This document shows positions 1-56,480 of a stretch of 64,000 nucleotides of DNA, in pieces. The position numbers and the translations under genes are program-made. The notes under the pieces are model-generated. The model searched no databases, was not told the origin of the DNA, and saw nothing but the letters and a program-made list of their open reading frames with translations. The stretch lies in sequence record ON568341.1. The stretch is one strand, 5' to 3'. How positions within the stretch are numbered: the first letter of the stretch is position 1; the number at the start of each line of letters is the position of its first letter.

Positions 1-2
1 AT

Positions 3-674
3 TTCCGTGATCTCTGGAAAGTATGGGCTAAAGATAATGATTATGATTACAAAGAAAAGAACTTCTATGATGATTTTGTACCTAATGAAGACCGTGGTGC
101 AGATGTTCATGAATTCTTTAAGATTAAAGAGTTCGTAAAACTTTGTAAGAAATATAACCGCCAGCGTGAGCGTTCAGTACAAGATAATATCATTGATACG
201 ATGGCAGATACTTACTATTATAGTAAAGCAATGCACATTGGTTACTATGGTAATTCAAGAGAAGCCTCTGTTATCGTTGATATCGACGGAACTCTTGCTC
301 ATAAATGGGGTCGTAATCCTTACGATGAAAGTACTGTACTACAAGATACACCAGATGAAGAAGTTATTTTGTCTATTATCGCTGAAGCAGTTTTCCATAA
401 ACGTAAGATTATTGTAATGAGTGGGCGTACTGAAGGGTGTCGTGCAGACACAGAACAGTGGCTTAAGAATTGGGGTGTTCCTTACGATGCATTGTTTATG
501 CGAGGCATCGATGATAAACGACCCGATGATGTGGTAAAATATGAGTTGTATATGAATAACGTCGTGCATCATTACGATGTTAAAAAAGTATACGATGACA
601 GATCACAAGTCGTATTCATGTGGCGTAAACTACTTGGATTAAAAGTGATGCAAGTTGCAGAAGGAAATTTCTGA
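3..674 (+). CDS. pseT: Polynucleotide kinase/3'-phosphatase (PNKP), 5'-truncated by the window edge
   Basis: The frame is open from position 3 and continues in frame into the listed ORF 201..674. It has the HAD motif DIDGTLA, SGR, RPDDVVK and the DDRSQVVFMWR...QVAEGNF ending typical of T4 PseT. Confidence 0.85.
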   Translation, partial: FRDLWKVWAKDNDYDYKEKNFYDDFVPNEDRGADVHEFFKIKEFVKLCKKYNRQRERSVQDNIIDTMADTYYYSKAMHIGYYGNSREASVIVDIDGTLAHKWGRNPYDESTVLQDTPDEEVILSIIAEAVFHKRKIIVMSGRTEGCRADTEQWLKNWGVPYDALFMRGIDDKRPDDVVKYELYMNNVVHHYDVKKVYDDRSQVVFMWRKLLGLKVMQVAEGNF

Positions 675-9507: not shown

Positions 9508-10299
9508 ATGAAATTTGTTGTAACGTCAGACGTACACGGTGGCACTGATTACCTCCATAGTGGTGATTACAGTGATACAGTACTGTTCATTGCTGGAGAC
9601 TTCGATGAAGTTAAACGCAGTCGTTACCGTACTGGTATCGAATCACTATGTAAGCAGTTCAAAAATGTAGTGCTGGTTCCTGGCAATCACGAATACTATG
9701 GTTCTAATATCCACAAAACGCATAAAGTTCTATCTGACATGCAAGATGAGATTCCCAATTTCATCTTTTTGCAAAACAAATTTGTATGGCTGGATGGGGT
9801 ACTTCTTGTTGGTAGTACTCTGTGGACAGACTTCGATAAAGGTAACTCTTTGACTAAGTTTGATGCTCGTCAAAAGATGAATGATTATAAACATATCCGT
9901 CATGGAACAACATCCGAGCCTTGGCGTAAGAAGTTGACACCAGATGATACGGAGTTCATGCATTATAAAGATAAACAATTTATTAAAAATTCTATTGACA
10001 CGGCTCGCTTTATGCATGATAATGATTTCAAGGTAATTGTGATTACACATCACGCACCAAGTTATCAAAGTGTTTCACCAAAATATAAAAATGATTCCCT
10101 GAATGGCTGTTACTGTTCAGATATGGATCAGTACATTGAAGATTTGGGTGCTGATATTTGGATTCATGGTCATGTTCATAGTAGCTTTGACTACCACATT
10201 GGTAAGACACGTATCATTTGTAATCCACGAGGCTATGAATCGTACAGTGGTGCTTGTGAGAATTTTGATTACAATCCTAAATTAGTATTTGAAATTTAA
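9508..10299 (+). CDS. Calcineurin-like metallophosphoesterase
   Basis: SDVH, AGD, GNHEYY, HHAP and HGHVH motifs. Confidence 0.9.
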   Translation: MKFVVTSDVHGGTDYLHSGDYSDTVLFIAGDFDEVKRSRYRTGIESLCKQFKNVVLVPGNHEYYGSNIHKTHKVLSDMQDEIPNFIFLQNKFVWLDGVLLVGSTLWTDFDKGNSLTKFDARQKMNDYKHIRHGTTSEPWRKKLTPDDTEFMHYKDKQFIKNSIDTARFMHDNDFKVIVITHHAPSYQSVSPKYKNDSLNGCYCSDMDQYIEDLGADIWIHGHVHSSFDYHIGKTRIICNPRGYESYSGACENFDYNPKLVFEI

Positions 10300-16493: not shown

Positions 16494-16522
16494 TTGACAT
16501 AATTAATCAATTATTGTACTAT
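16494..16522 (+). promoter_or_regulatory. Sigma70 promoter
   Basis: TTGACA-17-TACTAT. Confidence 0.75.
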
Positions 16523-16557: not shown

Positions 16558-17163
16558 ATGAAACGATTATTGAAAGAGATTATACAAACCGTTGTTATAA
16601 TTGCTGCATTAAACTTTCCTGCGGCGGCAGAAGTTTCAAAAAAAGCATCTGTTTTTCTATTAAATGATCATGTTGGGTCAATTGATGGTGAACTAAATGA
16701 TAAAACTGTACAAGATGTGGAGCAGTTGTGGAAAGAAAAAAAATTTAAAATTTTAACAATTACATCACCTGGTGGTGATTTTGATGCTGGTATTAAAATG
16801 GGAAATTTTGTTAGAGACAATGGTATAAATTTAATTGTTTCTAGATATTGCAATTCAGCATGTACTGTGGTATTCTTTAGTGTGCCCCCTGAAAAGCGAT
16901 ATATGACAAATCAATCAGTACTGGGATTACATAACATTTCGATCAAAAGTAACGTTAGAGATAGGGATAATACCTTTGTATCTGTTAGACAATTATCAAC
17001 ATTTACTGAAGAAATGGCAACAAAAGTAGGATTTTTATTTACACTATATTCAGCTAATGGAATTCCACCTAGCGTTCTATATAGAGTTAGTCGTGCACGT
17101 GGTGAAGATGTTGTTATCTTAACAAAAAAAGACCTAATTCATTACGGTTCGGTAAATCCATAA
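16558..17163 (+). CDS. Exported ClpP/crotonase-fold protein
   Basis: Signal peptide; ITSPGG...G..MG..VR...CNSAC...F....R......LGLH pattern. Confidence 0.7.
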   Translation: MKRLLKEIIQTVVIIAALNFPAAAEVSKKASVFLLNDHVGSIDGELNDKTVQDVEQLWKEKKFKILTITSPGGDFDAGIKMGNFVRDNGINLIVSRYCNSACTVVFFSVPPEKRYMTNQSVLGLHNISIKSNVRDRDNTFVSVRQLSTFTEEMATKVGFLFTLYSANGIPPSVLYRVSRARGEDVVILTKKDLIHYGSVNP

Positions 17164-17231
17164 AAATAATTATAATAACAGGATGATTATGTTGTTCTTC
17201 CTTTGTTATTAACTATATCGGAAATATAACT

Positions 17232-17492
17232 ATGACAAACATCCAGAATTTGACGTCTATTATTTTTTATGCTACAGTGGTGATGTATACTATTGTACTT
17301 ATTTTAACAGTTTTTATTTACAAAGATTACAAAAAAGGCTTTATTAATAGCTCAACAATGAAGTTCAATTCTAAATTTGAAGCAATTATATTTTATGTTT
17401 TGACAACATCATATTTGTTGTGTATAATGTTATTAGGGTCATTGATTTATATTTTATATACAACATTATTTGCAATTGGAGCTATTTTATGA
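17232..17492 (+). CDS. Small membrane protein
   Basis: Two transmembrane helices. Confidence 0.65.
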   Translation: MTNIQNLTSIIFYATVVMYTIVLILTVFIYKDYKKGFINSSTMKFNSKFEAIIFYVLTTSYLLCIMLLGSLIYILYTTLFAIGAIL

Positions 17493-18085
17493 CATGTATT
17501 ATTGCACACACTGATGGTGTAACTTCATTTATTGCAGGGGACAAGATGGGGAGTGATGGTTTTACGAAATCAATCCAAACAGAGCCTAAAGTGTTTGAGA
17601 AAGAATTTGTAAAGATTAGTGGTGATGACGGCTTGACTCGTACAAAAGATGTTATGACAATTGGATTCACTACATCATTTCGTATGGGTCAACTGCTAAC
17701 TTATAATTTAAATTTACCAGACCAAAATTCAAATGAGACGTTTCTACAGTATTTAGTACTGAAAGTTATTCCTATTATTCGTCAAATGTTTAAAGACGAA
17801 TGGGGTGCACGTGATACAACACAAGATGTTGGTGGTGGTCAATTTATTATTTTGCACAATCATAAGATTTATGAAATTCAGGAAGATTTTTCAGTTCTCC
17901 AGGCAAAATCAAGAGTTGCATCAGTTGGTAGTGGTACATATCATGCAATTGCAGCGATGCAAGCATACATTGATCTTGAGAAAGAAACTAACGTACAACT
18001 ACATGAACGTATCAAATCCATTTTCAAAATTGTCAGTGATAATGTGTCGAGTGTAAGCGAAGAGTTTGATGTATTAAAATATTAA
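17489..18085 (+). CDS. Ntn-hydrolase (HslV/proteasome beta-like) protein
   Basis: The likely start is the ATG of MTCIIAH (coupled ATGA overlap), leaving an N-terminal Thr; AGD..GS, PKVF, SFRMGQLL, SVGSG motifs. Confidence 0.7.
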   Translation: MTCIIAHTDGVTSFIAGDKMGSDGFTKSIQTEPKVFEKEFVKISGDDGLTRTKDVMTIGFTTSFRMGQLLTYNLNLPDQNSNETFLQYLVLKVIPIIRQMFKDEWGARDTTQDVGGGQFIILHNHKIYEIQEDFSVLQAKSRVASVGSGTYHAIAAMQAYIDLEKETNVQLHERIKSIFKIVSDNVSSVSEEFDVLKY

Positions 18086-18304: not shown

Positions 18305-19057
18305 ATGATATCAGAAAAATTTATAAGTAATGAAGGAAACAAGAGATTACTTATCATCTCAGGAGCAGGTCTTTCCGTTGAAAGTGGGATGGAGCCATTT
18401 CGATTTGATGATGGCTTATGGGATACATTTAAAATTAATGACGTATGTAATATTGCAAATTTAGATACAAAATATCATGTTGTTCATTCGTTTTATAACA
18501 CACTGCGTGTTAAACTGGGTCAATGTGAACCAAATGCAATGCATTATTTTATCAAATCCTTAGAGGATCAATATGGTGATTGTTTCCTTCATATGACCTC
18601 CAACATGGATGATCTTTATACACGTATTGGTGGTAAAGAACTCAAACTTCATGGTAATTTGTGTGAAGTGATAGAAAATTATAGTATTAATGGTGATGAT
18701 TATAACATTGTTAACTGTGGTTATGAGCCATATATACCAAAACATGATGTTTTTGCTAAACCAAATGTAGTGATGATTGGTGAATATCACCGTTACGTTG
18801 ATGGTGTTCGTTTGCCAATATACGAAGAAAGAAATAATGTTTTAAAAACACTTACCGAAAACGATACTGTGATTGTTATTGGAAGTAGCGATACAGTGCT
18901 TGTGTGGTCCAGATTAGCTGCGGCATTGCCCTGTTATAGCGTTAATGTTAACATTCGCAAAAATGATAATGATTTTCTGTTCAATGAAAAAATTATCAAA
19001 CCAGCTACCAAAGCAATACATCAATTAGAGACTATAATTAAGGAACGTATGAAATGA
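18305..19057 (+). CDS. Sirtuin (Sir2/CobB-like NAD-dependent deacylase)
   Basis: ISGAGLSVESG..FR, TSNMDDL, LHG, KPNVVMIGE, IVIGSS. Confidence 0.85.
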   Translation: MISEKFISNEGNKRLLIISGAGLSVESGMEPFRFDDGLWDTFKINDVCNIANLDTKYHVVHSFYNTLRVKLGQCEPNAMHYFIKSLEDQYGDCFLHMTSNMDDLYTRIGGKELKLHGNLCEVIENYSINGDDYNIVNCGYEPYIPKHDVFAKPNVVMIGEYHRYVDGVRLPIYEERNNVLKTLTENDTVIVIGSSDTVLVWSRLAAALPCYSVNVNIRKNDNDFLFNEKIIKPATKAIHQLETIIKERMK

Positions 19058-19605
19058 GTGTTAAAGAAGTTCCTTTTGGTGAATATGGTTCACGTGCCAA
19101 TTTTGTATTTTGCTATTTCTTTGCAAGAAAATGTAACCCTTACGAAAATTACGAATTGAATGATATACCAGAAGTAAATTTAGTATTACTCCAATTACGA
19201 TGGGATGGCCTTCTAGGGGGATGTGGTGGGACAGTTGAAAGTACTGATATCTCACTAGAAGATGCGTTACGTCGTGAAATTCAAGAAGAGATGGATTACA
19301 ATATTTTTGTTTCCCATCTTCGACCACTTAAAACTTTTGAAATTTATCCAGGTGCAAACAGTCATAGTTTTAGCTATGAAGTAACCTATGATGAGTTGAA
19401 ACACATTAGAGATGGATACACTAATGCTAAACATGCGAGTGCTGAAGTGGCTGGTGTAAATTTATGTCATATTTCTCGTTATTCTAAGGGACAAAATCGA
19501 GAAGCGGGATATAATAATCTTATGACTCAGAACTTCATTGGTACAGCAAAACAAGAATTGGAGTATCTGGTTCAAAAAGAAAACTTACTAATTAGTTATC
19601 TATAG
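19054..19605 (+). CDS. Nudix hydrolase resembling NUDT16
   Basis: LQLRWDGLLGGCGG.VE..D.SLEDALRREIQEE Nudix box; C-terminal NFIGTAKQEL. Confidence 0.75.
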   Translation: MSVKEVPFGEYGSRANFVFCYFFARKCNPYENYELNDIPEVNLVLLQLRWDGLLGGCGGTVESTDISLEDALRREIQEEMDYNIFVSHLRPLKTFEIYPGANSHSFSYEVTYDELKHIRDGYTNAKHASAEVAGVNLCHISRYSKGQNREAGYNNLMTQNFIGTAKQELEYLVQKENLLISYL

Positions 19606-19614
19606 GAGTTTAAC

Positions 19615-19935
19615 ATGTCTTACTCAATGTTTTTGGATGATATCCGTGATGCAAATCTATATTATCCAAACCAAGATATGGTGGTATGTCGTGACTTTAA
19701 AAGTGCATGTGAATATGTTATTGAAAATGGAATTCCAGCATTTGTATCATTTGACCATGACTTGGGTGATGTGAGCGAAGACGAAAAGACTGGATATTCT
19801 TTTGCTAAGTTTCTTATTGATTATATGTTTGATAATAATATTAAAGAACCGTTTGAGTACTTTGTTCACAGTAGTAATCCTGTTGGTAAAATTAATATTG
19901 AAACATACTTAAACAATGGGTTTAACGCATTATGA
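19615..19935 (+). CDS. Cyclic-phosphate-processing receiver domain protein
   Basis: FLDDIR, SFDHDLG, TGY.FAK.L, VHSSNPVG. Confidence 0.8.
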   Translation: MSYSMFLDDIRDANLYYPNQDMVVCRDFKSACEYVIENGIPAFVSFDHDLGDVSEDEKTGYSFAKFLIDYMFDNNIKEPFEYFVHSSNPVGKINIETYLNNGFNAL

Positions 19936-20234
19936 TTCAAACACACATCAAAAGTCTTATTTGTACTATTCTGTTGGGCACGGGAGTGTTTTTGTTCGGA
20001 CAATATCACGAGAATACTAAGCGTACCAACATTCACTACAATACCGCAGAAGTTGTTAGTTTAGGGCAATGTAGTGAGTCAAAATGTTCGTTTATGTACA
20101 AAACCAGCAATGGTGAAGTACGTAATGGACTATCAAGAGAACCAGTTTCAATTGGTCAACTTGTTTACCAGGAGTGCTGGGAAGAAAAGGTTCGAGGTTC
20201 CCGTTGCTATGTTGAATACGAACCAAATATGTAA
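19932..20234 (+). CDS. Membrane-anchored exported hypothetical protein
   Basis: N-terminal transmembrane helix; two Cys pairs. Confidence 0.65.
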   Translation: MIQTHIKSLICTILLGTGVFLFGQYHENTKRTNIHYNTAEVVSLGQCSESKCSFMYKTSNGEVRNGLSREPVSIGQLVYQECWEEKVRGSRCYVEYEPNM

Positions 20235-20294: not shown

Positions 20295-21734
20295 ATGAAA
20301 AAATATACAATTGACACAAACGTACTTCTATCTGACCCTAATGCATCTATTGCGTTTGATGGTGCTGCAATCATTCTACCATTTACTGTTCTAGAAGAAT
20401 TGGATTCAATTAAGAGTCGTAGTGTGGATGTTTCACGAGATGCTCGCGTTGCTATTCGTAACATTGAAGCAATTATTGCAAATGCATCTCATGATGAAAT
20501 TAGTAGTTCTGGTGTTAATATTGCTGATGTTCATACCAATATGAATCCTGACAGCAAATTGTTTGTTATTACAAACGAAGAAGCTGAAGCACTAATTCGT
20601 ACTAAAGGTTCAAACGACAAAGTTCAAACCCTTCTCAAAAGCACTGTACCTGATGATAAAATTATTCTGGTAGCTTTAGCAACCGAATCAGTACTGGTAA
20701 CTCGTGATATCAACATGCGTATCAAAGCACTAAGTTATGGTGTCGAGGTACAAGACTATCGTCATGATATTGTTATTGGTGATAGTGATTTGATTCACAT
20801 TGGTCAACATCATATGGAAATTAATTTTTGGGATGTATATAGCAATTTAACAAATACAAATATTAAAACTGAACAAATCGGTCGTCGATTGTATCATTAC
20901 ATCCCTAAAAGCTTGATTGAGCATTTGCTTCCACAAAATCTATGTATTGGTGATTATCTATATGATGATGCTGATGTATTATTTGTATACGAAGGTCAAT
21001 CAGCCATTGAGGAAGATGATGGTACACTAACACCAGAAGATATTTTGGTATTCCAAGATATTGGTCAATCAGTAGCGTTGCGTACTAAAGTATGGGATAT
21101 TAAAGCAAAGAATATTCAGCAAGCACTTGCCATCAACAGTATTCTCGATCCTGATGTACATCTAACAGTACTACTAGGTTCGGCTGGAACTGGCAAAACA
21201 TTAGTGACGATTGCTACTGCACTAGAGTTAGTACTGGAAAAACGCAAATATGACCGTGTTGTGTTCTCAAAACCACAAGATTCACAATGGGCTGAAATTG
21301 GTTTCTTACCAGGTTCCGAAATGGAAAAAATGCTACCACATTGTGGCCCTGCACTGGATGCATTAGAATTTTTACACAAAGATGATGCCTCACCACAAGG
21401 TAGTATCGAAGAGATTCTTAAACGTAACGTGATGCAATTTAAAGCACTAAACTTTGTGCGTGGACGCTCATTCACTAATACGATTCTTGTAGTTGATGAA
21501 TTCCAAAACATTACACCTGCACAAGCAAAAACTATCTTGACACGAGCAGGATTAAACTGTAAAGTAGTGATTATGGGAAACTTAGCACAGATTGATAGCA
21601 AATTTATCAGTCCAGTAAACAGTGGTTTGACATATGTAACTGAAAAATTCAAAGATTGGAGTGGTTGCCGTATCATTGAATTAGAAGGTGTTGTTCGTTC
21701 ACCACTTGCTGAATTTGCTGAAGAAAATATGTAA
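20295..21734 (+). CDS. phoH: PhoH family protein (PIN + PhoH ATPase)
   Basis: PIN motif IDTNVLL; GSAGTGKT Walker A; RGRS, VDEFQN, GNLAQID, RSPLA. Confidence 0.92.
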   Translation: MKKYTIDTNVLLSDPNASIAFDGAAIILPFTVLEELDSIKSRSVDVSRDARVAIRNIEAIIANASHDEISSSGVNIADVHTNMNPDSKLFVITNEEAEALIRTKGSNDKVQTLLKSTVPDDKIILVALATESVLVTRDINMRIKALSYGVEVQDYRHDIVIGDSDLIHIGQHHMEINFWDVYSNLTNTNIKTEQIGRRLYHYIPKSLIEHLLPQNLCIGDYLYDDADVLFVYEGQSAIEEDDGTLTPEDILVFQDIGQSVALRTKVWDIKAKNIQQALAINSILDPDVHLTVLLGSAGTGKTLVTIATALELVLEKRKYDRVVFSKPQDSQWAEIGFLPGSEMEKMLPHCGPALDALEFLHKDDASPQGSIEEILKRNVMQFKALNFVRGRSFTNTILVVDEFQNITPAQAKTILTRAGLNCKVVIMGNLAQIDSKFISPVNSGLTYVTEKFKDWSGCRIIELEGVVRSPLAEFAEENM

Positions 21735-21802: not shown

Positions 21803-21991
21803 ATGGCTAAACAACCTAAGAAAAAAGAACCAGTAGCTAAAGTTAAAAAAGAAAAAGTTATTCAATCCAAAGAACAACGTCTGTACGAACAACGTAAGAG
21901 TGAAACACTATCTGGACTACAAGCTCTACGTAAACAAGGTATTCTAACTCGTGCACAATATCGTGAACTAGTATCTATGAAAGGCTTTTGA
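21803..21991 (+). CDS. Small basic protein
   Basis: AAGGAG RBS; Lys-rich, 62 aa. Confidence 0.75.
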   Translation: MAKQPKKKEPVAKVKKEKVIQSKEQRLYEQRKSETLSGLQALRKQGILTRAQYRELVSMKGF

Positions 21992-22095
21992 TTCATTTGA
22001 AGCAATATTATGGAGTTCTTAATAAATACTTTTATAAGAATAATAATACTTTTTATTAAATTAAAAAGAACTCCATGTGTTATTTCAGTTTTTTA

Positions 22096-22121
22096 TCCCT
22101 GTCAATTGGCAGGGATTTTTT
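22096..22121 (+). terminator. Rho-independent terminator
   Basis: atccctg/cagggat stem with T-runs on both sides. Confidence 0.7.
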
Positions 22122-23980: not shown

Positions 23981-24952
23981 ATGAAAACTAAAATTATTTC
24001 TGAACAAAAAATCGGCAATACTACAGTACTGAATATTGAAGTTCAAGATCTTAGTAATGTTCGTTCTCTTACTGTTTGTACTCAGAGAGATGATTTGACT
24101 GATTTTTATAACTCCGAATACATGTCAGAAGAACATTGGGATATGGGATGGTTAGACGGTAGTAGTTATATCAGTTCTCGTTATAGTTTTGGTTCTCATG
24201 AAAATATTGAACAAGTAAAAAATGAGTATATTAAACTCAGTGATACTATTGAAATGAAAGAAGAAGATTGTGTAGAACTTTTCATTTTTGAATTCGATGC
24301 AGGAAATGGTAATTCATTACTAGTAAGTAATATTGAAGAACATTTAATGTATCATGATATTGAAGATGTAGATTTTAAAAGTATTAAAAATGTTGTTCAT
24401 ATGGTTGGTGGTAGTATTACTGATGATTCAGATATCGGTCATAATATTTCACTGTGCTTAATTTCTCATCCAAAAACTCGTGGTTTTAAAGTTCCACAAG
24501 ATGAAACTTACGTGTTTGAAACTGCTGATGAAGGAATTTATCCTTGGAATGATTATGTAGAATACTATGGTCATTTCTGTTCTGATATAAAAGAACTGAA
24601 AAAAGGCGAACGATATTTTGATATGTTCCGTGCAGCACAGCGTTTAGTACTGAATAATACTGAACTATTTCCTGATCGCGGTGAAGAAAATATGATTGAT
24701 ATTATCTTCAAGAACTATGATTATGTGCAGAACATTCCTGATAATGTACATTTGGAATATGTTCACGGTTCTTCAAACAAATTCTATAATATTGAATTGA
24801 ATGTTTCAGTGTGTGAAGTAATCATTGAGTACGGTGCTATTGGTAAAACCAGTACTACCGATGGTGAAGAATTCGAAACTATTGAAGAAGCACGTAAGTT
24901 CTTCGAGAAGAAAGTAATTTCCAAAATTAAAAGTGGTTATATCCCAAAATGA
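23981..24952 (+). CDS. Protein with a C-terminal WGR domain
   Basis: HLEYVHGSSNKFY...EYGAIG......F...EEA.KFFEKK...K.KSGY. Confidence 0.7.
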   Translation: MKTKIISEQKIGNTTVLNIEVQDLSNVRSLTVCTQRDDLTDFYNSEYMSEEHWDMGWLDGSSYISSRYSFGSHENIEQVKNEYIKLSDTIEMKEEDCVELFIFEFDAGNGNSLLVSNIEEHLMYHDIEDVDFKSIKNVVHMVGGSITDDSDIGHNISLCLISHPKTRGFKVPQDETYVFETADEGIYPWNDYVEYYGHFCSDIKELKKGERYFDMFRAAQRLVLNNTELFPDRGEENMIDIIFKNYDYVQNIPDNVHLEYVHGSSNKFYNIELNVSVCEVIIEYGAIGKTSTTDGEEFETIEEARKFFEKKVISKIKSGYIPK

Positions 24953-56003: not shown

Positions 56004-56480
56004 ATGATACATGAGCACCGAGGTAATCTGTTTGAATTGTTCAGTACTGTAACCGATGATGAAACTGCATTGCATATTATTGCACATGGTTGCAACGCCC
56101 AAGGTAAAATGGGTTCTGGTTTTGCAAAAGAACTAAGAAATCGTTACCCAATGGCATATGATGATTATAAAGCATATGAAAAGGAAATGGGATTTCTAAG
56201 AACTGGAAAAATTGCATATTCTTCGGTAAGTGATGATTTACTTATTGCAAACTGTATTACCCAACAATTCTACGGGAATGATGGTAAAAAATATGTAAGT
56301 TATGATGCAATTGATGATATTTTCAAAGAGATAAATTACTTATGTAATATTGAACGTAGTGTTTATGTACACTTTCCGAAAATTGGAGCCGATTTGGGTG
56401 GTGGTAACTGGAACGTTATCAAAGAAATTATTGATCACAGACTGGTCAATGCAGAAAAACACTTATATATTCTAAAATAA
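56004..56480 (+). CDS. Macrodomain protein (Poa1p/T4 Tk.4-like)
   Basis: GNLF...IAHGCNAQGKMGSGFAK...HFPKIGADLGGGNW. Confidence 0.88.
   Translation: MIHEHRGNLFELFSTVTDDETALHIIAHGCNAQGKMGSGFAKELRNRYPMAYDDYKAYEKEMGFLRTGKIAYSSVSDDLLIANCITQQFYGNDGKKYVSYDAIDDIFKEINYLCNIERSVYVHFPKIGADLGGGNWNVIKEIIDHRLVNAEKHLYILK

What the first reader, a model, noticed from the sequence alone, without database searches (positions are those of the whole stretch)
18305..19935. Coupled operon: sirtuin, NUDT16-like Nudix and cyclic-phosphate receiver domain
Seen: the three genes are adjacent, with an ATGA overlap at 19054-19057. The Nudix protein has LQLRWDGLLGGCGGTVESTDISLEDALRREIQEE and NFIGTAKQEL. From memory these parallel the eukaryotic NUDT16 motifs MQMRFDGRLGFPGGFVD..D.SLEDGLNRELREE and SFIGSAREQL more than typical bacterial Nudix proteins. 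The sirtuin has TSN in place of TQN and no clear zinc-finger. Established: NUDT16 decaps RNA and trims ADP-ribose from proteins, sirtuins consume NAD and release ADP-ribose products, and cyclic-phosphate receiver domains are linked to RNA-repair loci. Inference: a module that reverses NAD-derived marks (ADP-ribosylation, NAD caps) or clears defence signals.
Basis: partly seen in the sequence, partly recalled or inferred. Interest (0 to 1): 0.65.

Follow-up and report, generated by a model that had tools for sequence, protein, structure and literature searches.

The report
Jumbo-phage sirtuin, NUDT16-like Nudix, cREC operon
A giant E. coli phage carries a tightly linked, strongly conserved set of genes for an unusual NAD-using sirtuin, a Nudix enzyme that resembles the animal RNA-decapping enzyme NUDT16, and a small phosphate-processing domain; the gene set was already predicted by computation in 2022 to repair cut RNA, but nobody has tested it.

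Summary
The window is Escherichia phage UE-S1, a RaK2-like jumbo phage.

- **Genes:** Sir2 (18305-19057), Nudix (19054-19605) and cREC (19615-19935) are translationally coupled. A membrane protein and a PIN-PhoH RNase/ATPase follow, all before one terminator.
- **Nudix:** it is NUDT16-like by Pfam, by sequence against solved structures, and by fold (the top 39 hits are all NUDT16, X29 or TIRR). The catalytic residues are intact.
- **Sirtuin:** it has T-[S/A]-N instead of TQN and no conserved zinc cysteines, in all four phages aligned.
- **Linkage:** Nudix and cREC are one fused protein in GAP32 and fHe-Yen9-04 and one open frame in five viral contigs. dN/dS is 0-0.03 for the three genes.

The module is not new. 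Iyer et al. 2022 described this jumbo-phage neighbourhood (sirtuin, 2H, Nudix, cREC, PIN) and proposed NAD-dependent RNA repair.

My context survey supports an RNA-end role for cREC. The new details are:

- the NUDT16 affinity of the Nudix;
- the "2H" partner belongs to the anti-CBASS Acb1 family;
- NAMPT lies upstream in sister phages;
- UE-S1 has lost both Acb1 and NAMPT.

The function is untested. RNA repair is the best reading (about 0.5). Clearing defence signals remains possible.

The parts
16494..16522 (+). Sigma-70-like promoter candidate (TTGACA-17-TACTAT) upstream of the first gene of the unit
   Evidence: 10 of 12 consensus positions match. An 11 of 12 site sits at the equivalent place in PBECO4, L171:495-523. 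Function is inferred, not shown.
17400..17428 (+). Perfect sigma-70 consensus (TTGACA-17-TATAAT), about 900 nt upstream of Sir2
   Evidence: It is the only perfect match in the 64 kb window; 0.12 are expected by chance. It is not conserved at this place in PBECO4, so its use is uncertain.
18305..19057 (+). Atypical sirtuin (UES1_427): NAD-binding GAGxS and catalytic His-Gly kept, TSN in place of TQN, zinc-ribbon cysteines lost
   Evidence: PF02146 at 7e-20 and phrog_2162 at 2.5e-78. Best solved relative is E. coli CobB at 7e-22. It scores far below the NCBIfam CobB cut-offs. The clade alignment is A3. dN/dS is 0.031.
19054..19605 (+). NUDT16-like Nudix hydrolase (UES1_428), start overlapping the Sir2 stop (ATGA)
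   Evidence: PF22327 at 1e-18. NUDT16 and X29 score 2e-12 by sequence. By fold, E is 1e-14 and TM about 0.8 with a model of pLDDT 93. R74, E75, E78 and E79 are invariant. dN/dS is 0.034.
19615..19935 (+). cREC (cyclic-phosphate processing receiver-like) domain protein (UES1_429). The true start is probably 19615, not the annotated 19627
   Evidence: PF20274 at 1.5e-22. D8, D9, R11, D47, H48, D49, S86 and N88 are invariant. The model (pLDDT 96) is a four-strand receiver-like fold, Z 8-9.7. A GGAG lies 6 nt upstream of 19615, and PBECO4 uses this start. It is fused to the Nudix in GAP32 and Yen9-04.
19932..20234 (+). Small membrane protein (one N-terminal hydrophobic helix, Cys-containing C-terminal part), start overlapping the cREC stop (ATGA)
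   Evidence: phrog_14661 at 1.2e-42. The overlap is seen. It is present after cREC in all RaK2-like loci. dN/dS is 0.125. Function unknown.
20295..21734 (+). PIN-PhoH protein (PIN endoRNase domain plus PhoH ATPase)
   Evidence: PF13638 PIN_4 at 4e-20 and PF02562 PhoH at 1.6e-42. It follows the module in all RaK2-like loci.
21803..21991 (+). Small basic ORF (62 aa), the last gene before the terminator
   Evidence: ORF listed and annotated as UES1_432. It has no family match.
22095..22116 (+). Intrinsic-terminator-like hairpin followed by a T run; probable end of the transcription unit
   Evidence: 9-bp stem with 5 GC pairs, then TTTTTT. The record also annotates a terminator here.
1..674 (+). 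Distal probable pathway partner: 3' part of a T4-type polynucleotide kinase/3'-phosphatase (UES1_394). An Rnl1-family RNA ligase lies about 1 kb further upstream, outside the window
   Evidence: PF25109 HAD_PNKP at 5e-44. Rnl1 (PF09511, 4e-16) is at record 183665-184285.

Best explanation
**What it is.** This is the Asteriusvirus version of a conserved module of RaK2-like jumbo phages. The genes are probably co-transcribed, possibly early, and the module works on NAD and on RNA ends.

**Most likely mechanism.**
1. The atypical sirtuin uses NAD+ to transfer ADP-ribose, not to deacylate lysines. Its likely target is a phosphate at a broken RNA end, in the manner of KptA/Tpt1.
2. The cREC domain opens a cyclic phosphate. 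This could be the 2',3'-cyclic end of a cleaved RNA or the 1''-2'' cyclic phosphate of the ADP-ribose by-product.
3. The NUDT16-like Nudix cuts the pyrophosphate of the ADP-ribose-containing product, or of an NDP-X group on the RNA 5' end.
4. PIN-PhoH supplies RNA cleavage and unwinding.
5. Together with the phage's own Pnkp and Rnl1 ligase, the module would restore tRNAs or mRNAs cut by host defence nucleases.

**Shown here:** the domain identities, intact catalytic residues, the coupling and fusion, conservation, and the contexts.

**Inferred:** every substrate and the order of the steps.
For: - **Domain identities:**
- **Catalytic residues intact:**
- **Nudix and cREC are one polypeptide:** in GAP32 and Yen9-04 and in 5 of 7 RaK2-like viral contigs. 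This argues that the two act on one substrate or pathway.
- **cREC neighbours in 73 unrelated viral loci:** Pnkp, Rnl1 or CCA-adding enzyme lie within 8 kb in 21 loci. Counting phosphoesterase, MazG and HD genes as well, the number is 31. Several are directly adjacent.
- **Sirtuin-cREC pairing recurs:** as RNA ligase, cREC, Sir2 in an rV5-like phage, and next to each other in 5 Campylobacterota loci.
- **The sirtuin lacks deacylase hallmarks:** TQN is changed, the zinc module is lost, and it scores far below the CobB cut-offs.
- **UE-S1, GAP32 and RaK2 all have an Rnl1-family ligase, and UE-S1 also Pnkp; none has KptA or RtcB**.
- **Strong purifying selection**.
- **The same model was published from independent context analysis:** PMC9503650 section 3.7.3 and PMC7824862.
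Against: - No enzyme of the module has been assayed, and I found no experimental paper.
- UE-S1 already has the complete T4-type healing and sealing pair, Pnkp plus Rnl1. From my knowledge of T4 RNA repair, that pathway leaves no 2'-phosphate, so a Tpt1-like step is not obviously needed.
- Rnl1 and Pnkp lie 18-20 kb away, not in the operon.
- UE-S1 lacks the 2H partner. Where that partner is present, it belongs to the anti-CBASS Acb1 family.
- NAMPT lies next to the module in sister phages. That fits NAD or counter-defence metabolism as well as it fits repair.
- PIN domains are metal-dependent nucleases, which from my knowledge do not leave cyclic phosphates.
Confidence: 0.5

Rival explanations
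1. Counter-defence by clearing NAD-derived molecules. The Nudix and cREC would destroy ADP-ribose-based or cyclic-phosphate immune signals, or remove ADP-ribose or NAD marks from host or phage macromolecules. The sirtuin would supply or remodel these molecules.
For: - In all 7 RaK2-like viral contigs and in GAP32, the module is preceded by NAMPT, a component of the NARP2 NAD-reconstitution pathway as summarised in PMC13464706.
- It is also preceded by an Acb1-family gene: PF23474 at 5.7e-16, solved Acb1 9q2g at 3.8e-6, both HxT/S motifs kept. Acb1 degrades CBASS signals (PMC9117128).
- NUDT16 cleaves protein-linked ADP-ribose (PMC8883491).
- Sigma-70-like promoters suggest early expression.
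- Iyer et al. also propose that phage Nudix and related domains counter soluble ADPr signals.
Against: - Outside this lineage, cREC's neighbours are RNA-repair enzymes, not anti-defence genes.
- UE-S1 keeps the module under strong constraint after losing NAMPT and Acb1, so the module does not depend on them.
- The anti-Thoeris proteins in the papers I retrieved are sponges or the glycosidase RyDEP, not Nudix or cREC proteins.
- A phage-encoded NAD consumer is an odd partner for signal clearance.
- PADLOC gives no defence-type SIR2 match.
Confidence: 0.2
2. Host takeover by protein deacylation. The sirtuin would be a CobB-like lysine deacylase that resets host or phage protein acylation. The Nudix would remove its product O-acyl-ADP-ribose or ADP-ribose, and NAMPT, where present, would remove the inhibitor nicotinamide.
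For: - The closest solved relatives are E. coli CobB and SIRT5, with the NAD-binding motifs and catalytic His kept.
- Related sirtuins occur in 975 phage records, including T5-like and rV5-like phages. That suggests a general role.
- The Sir2 and Nudix genes overlap.
- From my own knowledge, some Nudix enzymes hydrolyse O-acetyl-ADP-ribose.
Against: - TQN is replaced by T-[S/A]-N and the zinc-binding cysteines are not conserved.
- Scores are far below every NCBIfam deacylase cut-off, for example 92 bits against 318.
- This reading gives cREC no role, and explains neither its fusion to the Nudix nor the recurrent sirtuin-cREC-RNA ligase linkage.
Confidence: 0.15
3. RNA 5'-end decapping and turnover. 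The NUDT16-like Nudix would remove NAD, FAD, dephospho-CoA or triphosphate-type 5' ends from host or phage RNAs, as NUDT16 does in animals and related Nudix enzymes do in giant viruses. This would feed decay by PIN-PhoH, and cREC would trim the 3' ends.
For: - The nearest large protein clusters are eukaryotic U8 snoRNA-decapping enzymes, NUDT16L1 and Nucleocytoviricota Nudix proteins.
- A NUDT16-FAD complex is among the top fold matches (6x7u).
- A PIN-PhoH RNase/ATPase lies in the same unit.
- Iyer et al. note that giant-virus Nudix enzymes decap host mRNA.
Against: - This reading gives the sirtuin no role.
- The two NUDT16 aromatic residues F57 and F61 are Gly and Thr in the phage protein (alignment). 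From my memory these line NUDT16's substrate pocket, so base recognition may differ.
- Nothing has been assayed.
Confidence: 0.1

Closest known systems
Sirtuin-centred RNA-repair neighbourhood, type 1, of jumbo phages (Iyer, Burroughs, Anantharaman & Aravind 2022, Viruses 14:1977, section 3.7.3; example Serratia phage BF)
   Same: The same lineage of RaK2-like jumbo phages and the same genes in the same order: sirtuin, Nudix, cREC and a PIN endoRNase.
   Different: - UE-S1 has no 2H gene.
- Its Nudix and cREC are separate genes 9 nt apart, not fused.
- The passages I searched never mention NUDT16 or PhoH (0 occurrences each), nor the coupled membrane protein, the Acb1 identity of the 2H gene or the NAMPT neighbour in this neighbourhood.
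- The system is a computational prediction with no experimental test.
Human NUDT16 / Xenopus X29 (U8 snoRNA-decapping Nudix; also cleaves protein-linked ADP-ribose)
   Same: - Same subfamily by Pfam, by sequence (2e-12) and by fold (TM about 0.8).
- The Nudix-box spacing is identical, including DISLE and R-E-x-x-E-E, and the C-terminal NFIG[T/S]A motif is shared.
   Different: - Only 24-27% identity.
- NUDT16 F57 and F61 are Gly and Thr in the phage protein.
- It is a phage protein, fused or coupled to cREC and to a sirtuin.
- Substrates are unknown.
KptA/Tpt1 RNA 2'-phosphotransferase pathway (Tpt1, then a 2H cyclic phosphodiesterase, then a macro-domain phosphatase)
   Same: The proposed logic is the same: NAD-dependent ADP-ribosyl transfer to an RNA phosphate, giving ADP-ribose 1''-2'' cyclic phosphate that is then degraded. 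The three phages checked lack KptA.
   Different: - The transferase would be a sirtuin, which is unrelated in fold to KptA.
- The clean-up enzymes would be cREC and a Nudix rather than 2H and macro domains.
- None of this has been shown.
E. coli CobB / SIRT5 (class III sirtuin deacylases)
   Same: They are the best solved relatives. The Rossmann NAD-binding motifs and the catalytic His are shared.
   Different: TQN is TSN or TAN, the zinc-binding cysteines are absent, and the protein fails all the NCBIfam deacylase cut-offs.
T4 Pnkp-Rnl1 tRNA repair
   Same: UE-S1 encodes both enzymes 18-20 kb upstream. In other phages cREC sits directly beside homologues of these enzymes.
   Different: From my knowledge, the T4 pathway needs no NAD, sirtuin, Nudix or cREC. 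How the two sets of genes relate is unknown.

Membership tests
NUDT16/X29 subfamily of Nudix hydrolases (Pfam PF22327) | Scores above the family's curated cut-off and better than generic NUDIX | tested here: met
   68.3 bits against a cut-off of 27; generic NUDIX scores 29.3 bits. The same holds in GAP32 and RaK2.
NUDT16/X29 subfamily of Nudix hydrolases (Pfam PF22327) | Closest solved structures are NUDT16, X29 or TIRR rather than generic Nudix proteins | tested here: met
   By sequence: 2e-12 for NUDT16 and X29, against more than 0.03 for generic Nudix. By fold: ranks 1-39 are all NUDT16, X29, TIRR or Syndesmos (E 1e-14 to 7e-11, TM 0.7-0.8). The next hit is at 1e-7 with TM 0.56.
NUDT16/X29 subfamily of Nudix hydrolases (Pfam PF22327) | Catalytic Nudix-box Arg and Glu residues (R-E-x-x-E-E) present, unlike in the inactive paralogue TIRR | tested here: met
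   R74, E75, E78 and E79 align with NUDT16 R75, E76, E79 and E80. They are invariant in 13 homologues.
NUDT16/X29 subfamily of Nudix hydrolases (Pfam PF22327) | Hydrolysis of RNA caps, ADP-ribose conjugates or IDP | not testable with these tools
   Needs enzyme assays.
Sirtuin (Pfam PF02146) lysine deacylases | Sir2 domain with the Rossmann GAGxS NAD-binding motif and the catalytic His | tested here: met
   72 bits against a cut-off of 24. GAGLS and LHG align with CobB. H116 and G117 are invariant.
Sirtuin (Pfam PF02146) lysine deacylases | TQN(I/V)D motif | tested here: not met
   TSN in UE-S1 and RaK2, TAN in GAP32 and Yen9-04.
Sirtuin (Pfam PF02146) lysine deacylases | Four-cysteine zinc ribbon in the small domain | tested here: not met
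   UE-S1 has only two Cys in that region. Both are replaced by K/T/T and L/I/I in the three relatives.
Sirtuin (Pfam PF02146) lysine deacylases | Reaches the NCBIfam CobB / deacylase equivalog cut-offs | tested here: not met
   Best score is 92 bits against a cut-off of 318.
cREC (Pfam PF20274) | Family score, conserved acidic residues and a receiver-like fold | tested here: met
   80.5 bits against a cut-off of 27. D8, D9, D47 and D49 are invariant, along with R11, H48, S86 and N88. The model (pLDDT 96) matches receiver domains at Z 8-9.7 over about 88 residues.
cREC (Pfam PF20274) | Cyclic-phosphate hydrolysis | not testable with these tools
   This is only a prediction in the literature. 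No cREC structure has been solved.
Iyer 2022 type-1 sirtuin RNA-repair neighbourhood | Sirtuin, Nudix, cREC and PIN endoRNase linked in a jumbo phage | tested here: met
   the same order is seen in relatives.
Iyer 2022 type-1 sirtuin RNA-repair neighbourhood | Linked 2H phosphoesterase | tested here: not met
   UE-S1 and RaK2 have no PF13563 match and no homologue of GAP32_118. It is present in GAP32 and in 7 of 7 RaK2-like viral contigs, where it belongs to the Acb1 family.
NARP2 NAD-reconstitution pathway | NAMPT present | tested here: not met
   UE-S1 has no PF04095 match. GAP32 and RaK2 have one just upstream of the module.
Defence-type SIR2 NADases (ThsA, DSR, SIR2-HerA) | Match to PADLOC defence SIR2 models | tested here: not met
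   No PADLOC family matches the sirtuin at E 0.01 or better.

The most novel reading that the evidence does not exclude
The sirtuin would be the first sirtuin that acts on RNA, as a non-homologous replacement for the Tpt1/KptA 2'-phosphotransferase. The Nudix-cREC pair would be a two-headed RNA end-healing or by-product-clearing enzyme. Its Nudix half would be a phage member of the NUDT16 decapping lineage, which is otherwise known from eukaryotes and giant viruses.
Probability: 0.2. Interest if true: 0.8.

Novelty: new member of a known kind. Interest (0 to 1): 0.4.

Why it matters
All three enzymes lack a known substrate, and they sit in E. coli phages that can be grown and engineered; the relative Sharanji grows on K-12 MG1655.

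Testing the module could deliver three things:
- the first biochemical activity for the cREC domain, which is found in hundreds of phages and in Campylobacterota and Bacteroidota genomes;
- a test of whether a sirtuin can take the place of Tpt1/KptA in RNA repair;
- the role of a NUDT16-type enzyme outside eukaryotes and giant viruses.

It also bears on how jumbo phages cope with RNA-cleaving and NAD-based host defences.

The locus itself is not a discovery, since the neighbourhood was published in 2022. The value here is in the sharper annotation and in the clearer experiments it allows.

Tried and rejected
- **Bacterial relatives of the Nudix.** A scan of genome contigs with the Nudix alignment found none. 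The peptide patterns were narrow, so this says little.
- **Whole genome of the window.** None is held. I searched the phage records through handles instead.
- **2H or Acb1 homologue in UE-S1 and RaK2.** None found.
- **KptA and RtcB.** Absent from all three phages checked.
- **PF09414 RNA ligase.** Absent from UE-S1 and RaK2.
- **PADLOC.** Nothing for Sir2, cREC or the membrane protein. The Nudix gave only a weak partial match, PDC-S07, 17 bits over about 30 residues, which I disregarded.
- **Solved structures for cREC by sequence.** None.
- **Complex prediction for Nudix plus cREC.** That the split proteins bind each other therefore rests only on the fusion in relatives.
- **Public RNA runs.** Only short contigs of related phages (85-99% alike) turned up in wastewater libraries, two of them metatranscriptomes from one study. 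Contigs cannot show transcription, starts or strand.
- **NARP3 and RyDEP papers.** I checked both as possible explanations; they concern unrelated proteins.
- **The perfect promoter at 17400.** I tested it for conservation and did not find it in PBECO4 or GAP32, so I do not rely on it.
- **First try of the cREC genome-contig scan.** It failed for lack of a sufficiently conserved stretch. It worked with a smaller alignment.
Full report
**Identity of the window.** The window is Escherichia phage UE-S1 (ON568341.1), 100% identical over the query. UE-S1 is a 358-kb jumbo phage of the genus Asteriusvirus, in the RaK2-like group. Window coordinate equals record coordinate minus 186000.

**Observation.**
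- Three + strand ORFs lie at the stated coordinates.
- The Sir2 stop and the Nudix start overlap in ATGA at 19054-19057.
- The Nudix stop and the cREC start are 9 nt apart. A GGAG lies 6 nt before the ATG at 19615. This ATG is the start used in PBECO4 and is more likely than the 19627 annotated in UE-S1.
- A second ATGA overlap, at 19932-19935, couples cREC to a 100-aa membrane protein.
- A PIN-PhoH gene follows at 20295-21734, then a small ORF, then a terminator-like hairpin at 22095-22116.
- Upstream candidates for the promoter are a 10/12 sigma-70-like site at 16494-16522 and a perfect TTGACA-17-TATAAT at 17400-17428. The latter is the only perfect match in the window, with 0.12 expected by chance.
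- The first site has an 11/12 counterpart in PBECO4. The perfect site does not. RaK2 has an 11/12 site just before the gene that precedes Sir2.
- Early transcription by host polymerase is therefore plausible but not shown.

**The three proteins.**

*Nudix.*
- It scores 68 bits on Pfam Nudt16-like, against 29 on generic NUDIX.
- Against solved structures by sequence, human NUDT16 and Xenopus X29 lead at 2e-12, TIRR follows at 1e-7, and generic Nudix proteins appear only above 0.03.
- A model with mean pLDDT 93 gives NUDT16, X29, TIRR or Syndesmos at every rank from 1 to 39 (E 1e-14 to 7e-11, TM 0.7-0.8). Scores then drop to a CoA pyrophosphatase at 1e-7 with TM 0.56.
- The Nudix box has the same spacing as in X29 and includes DISLE. 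R74, E75, E78 and E79 are invariant in 13 homologues. It therefore looks like an active enzyme, not a TIRR-like binder.
- NUDT16 F57 and F61 are Gly and Thr in the phage protein.
- The nearest large clusters in the ESM Atlas are eukaryotic U8-decapping enzymes, NUDT16L1 and giant-virus Nudix proteins.
- The Pfam family passes its cut-off in only 1 of 14 control prokaryote genomes.

*Sirtuin.*
- It is closest to E. coli CobB (7e-22) and keeps the GAGxS motif and the catalytic His-Gly.
- In all four phage lineages aligned it has T-[S/A]-N in place of TQN, and no conserved cysteine where the zinc ribbon should be.
- It fails every NCBIfam deacylase cut-off and matches no PADLOC defence SIR2 model.
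- Relatives occur in 975 phage records.

*cREC.*
- It scores 80 bits on PF20274.
- D8, D9, R11, D47, H48, D49, S86 and N88 are invariant across 38 diverse homologues.
- The model (pLDDT 96) is a four-strand receiver-like fold that matches only receiver domains, at Z 8-9.7.
- No cREC structure has been solved.

**Linkage.**
- In GAP32 and Yersinia phage fHe-Yen9-04, Nudix and cREC are one ORF of about 301 aa. That ORF carries both Pfam domains.
- Of 7 RaK2-like contigs in IMG/VR, 5 have the fusion and 2 have split genes.
- The order Sir2, Nudix, cREC, membrane protein, PIN-PhoH holds in RaK2, GAP32, Yen9-04, PBECO4 and all 7 contigs.
- Against PBECO4, dN/dS is 0.031 for Sir2, 0.034 for the Nudix, 0 for cREC, 0.125 for the membrane protein and 0.099 for PIN-PhoH.

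**What is already known.**
- Iyer et al. [quoted passage not shown]
- They propose that the sirtuin's ADP-ribosyltransferase activity replaces KptA in removing RNA 2'-phosphates. The other enzymes would open cyclic phosphates or degrade ADP-ribose cyclic phosphate.
- cREC was named and predicted in Iyer et al. 2021 (PMC7824862).
- The 2022 paper never mentions NUDT16 or PhoH.
- I found no experimental work on the module.

**My own context tests.**
- Of 80 cREC loci from viral contigs, the 73 that are not RaK2-like contain neither this sirtuin nor this Nudix.
- In those 73, Pnkp, Rnl1-type ligase or CCA-adding enzyme lie within 8 kb in 21 loci. With calcineurin-like phosphoesterase, MazG and HD genes included, the number is 31. 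Several are directly adjacent.
- I have no matched background rate for these counts. Each such gene is typically single-copy in a genome of 50-500 kb, so the enrichment looks real but is not quantified.
- In the rV5-like phage pangalan the order is Rnl1-type ligase, cREC, Sir2.
- In Aeromonas phage 65, cREC lies close to a CCA-adding enzyme and an HD phosphohydrolase.
- In 80 cellular loci (Campylobacterota and Bacteroidota), an rV5-type sirtuin sits next to cREC in 5 and a phosphoesterase in 6. cREC is fused to an NT5C-type HAD domain in one.
- The sirtuin-cREC pair therefore recurs in three separate settings. The NUDT16-like Nudix is an addition specific to RaK2-like phages. A lone distant homologue in Aeromonas LAh phages has no annotated partner nearby; its neighbours are mostly hypothetical and were not scanned.

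**Complications.**
- UE-S1 lacks the 2H gene, NAMPT, KptA and RtcB.
- It does have the T4-type pair Rnl1 and Pnkp, 18-20 kb upstream. From my knowledge that pair heals cyclic ends without leaving a 2'-phosphate, which weakens the need for a Tpt1-like step.
- The "2H" gene of GAP32, annotated as RNA ligase, is an Acb1-family protein: PF23474 at 5.7e-16 against 25.8 bits (below cut-off) for generic 2H, solved Acb1 at 3.8e-6, HxT and HxS motifs kept. Acb1 degrades CBASS signals.
- NAMPT lies a few genes upstream in GAP32, RaK2 and all 7 contigs.
- UE-S1 has lost both neighbours yet keeps the core module under strong constraint, so the core does not depend on them.

**Verdict.**
- The best reading is an NAD-dependent module that processes RNA ends and ADP-ribose, serving RNA repair as a counter-defence (confidence about 0.5).
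- The rivals are clearance of NAD-derived signals or marks (0.2), protein deacylation with product removal (0.15) and RNA decapping and turnover (0.1).
- This is a new member of a kind that is known but untested.
- The useful additions are the NUDT16 affinity, the Acb1 identity of the 2H partner, the NAMPT link, the coupled membrane protein and the reduced gene set in Asteriusvirus.
- The complex prediction for Nudix plus cREC could not be run, and public RNA data were uninformative.

Noticed in passing
window 23981-24952 (+): A 323-aa protein has a C-terminal WGR domain (PF05406, 1e-10), a domain best known from PARPs. Its N-terminal 250 residues match nothing. It lies 2 kb downstream of the module, after the terminator, and may belong to the same NAD/ADP-ribose theme.
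   Followed up: partly
window 56085-56426 (+): A weak Macro-domain match (19.5 bits, just under the cut-off of 22). GAP32 and RaK2 have stronger Macro matches elsewhere in their genomes.
   Followed up: partly
L001:936-1382 (GAP32_118) and its homologues in L011-L017: This gene is annotated as 'RNA ligase' in GAP32 and fHe-Yen9-04. It is an Acb1-family (anti-CBASS) 2H phosphoesterase with both catalytic motifs kept, so the annotation is misleading.
   Followed up: yes
window 19615-19935: The UE-S1 record starts the cREC gene at 19627. The ATG at 19615 has a GGAG 6 nt upstream and is the start used in PBECO4, so the deposited start is probably 4 codons too short.
   Followed up: yes
window 18305-19935 compared with L171: Synonymous divergence between UE-S1 and PBECO4 varies widely between adjacent genes: dS is 0.92 for Sir2, 0.27 for the Nudix and 0.05 for cREC. 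This suggests recent recombination within the operon.
   Followed up: no
window 16558-18085 (+): The same probable transcription unit begins with a ClpP/NfeD-like protease (phrog_26024), two small membrane proteins and an HslV-like peptidase (phrog_1040). Whether they relate to the module is unknown.
   Followed up: no
window 9508-10299 (+) and 1-674 (+): A calcineurin-like metallophosphoesterase (PF00149, 2e-12) and the 3' part of a T4-type Pnkp (PF25109, 5e-44) lie upstream in the window. An Rnl1-family RNA ligase sits just before the window start.
   Followed up: partly
L009:5773-6486 (phage pangalan): A second gene annotated as 'Sir2-like' lies directly after the sirtuin of the rV5-like phage. 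It matches no Pfam family at E 0.01 or better.
   Followed up: no
L124:7452-8393 (Flavobacterium sp.): Here cREC is fused to an N-terminal NT5C-type HAD 5'-nucleotidase domain. This is another natural fusion of cREC to a nucleotide phosphoesterase.
   Followed up: no
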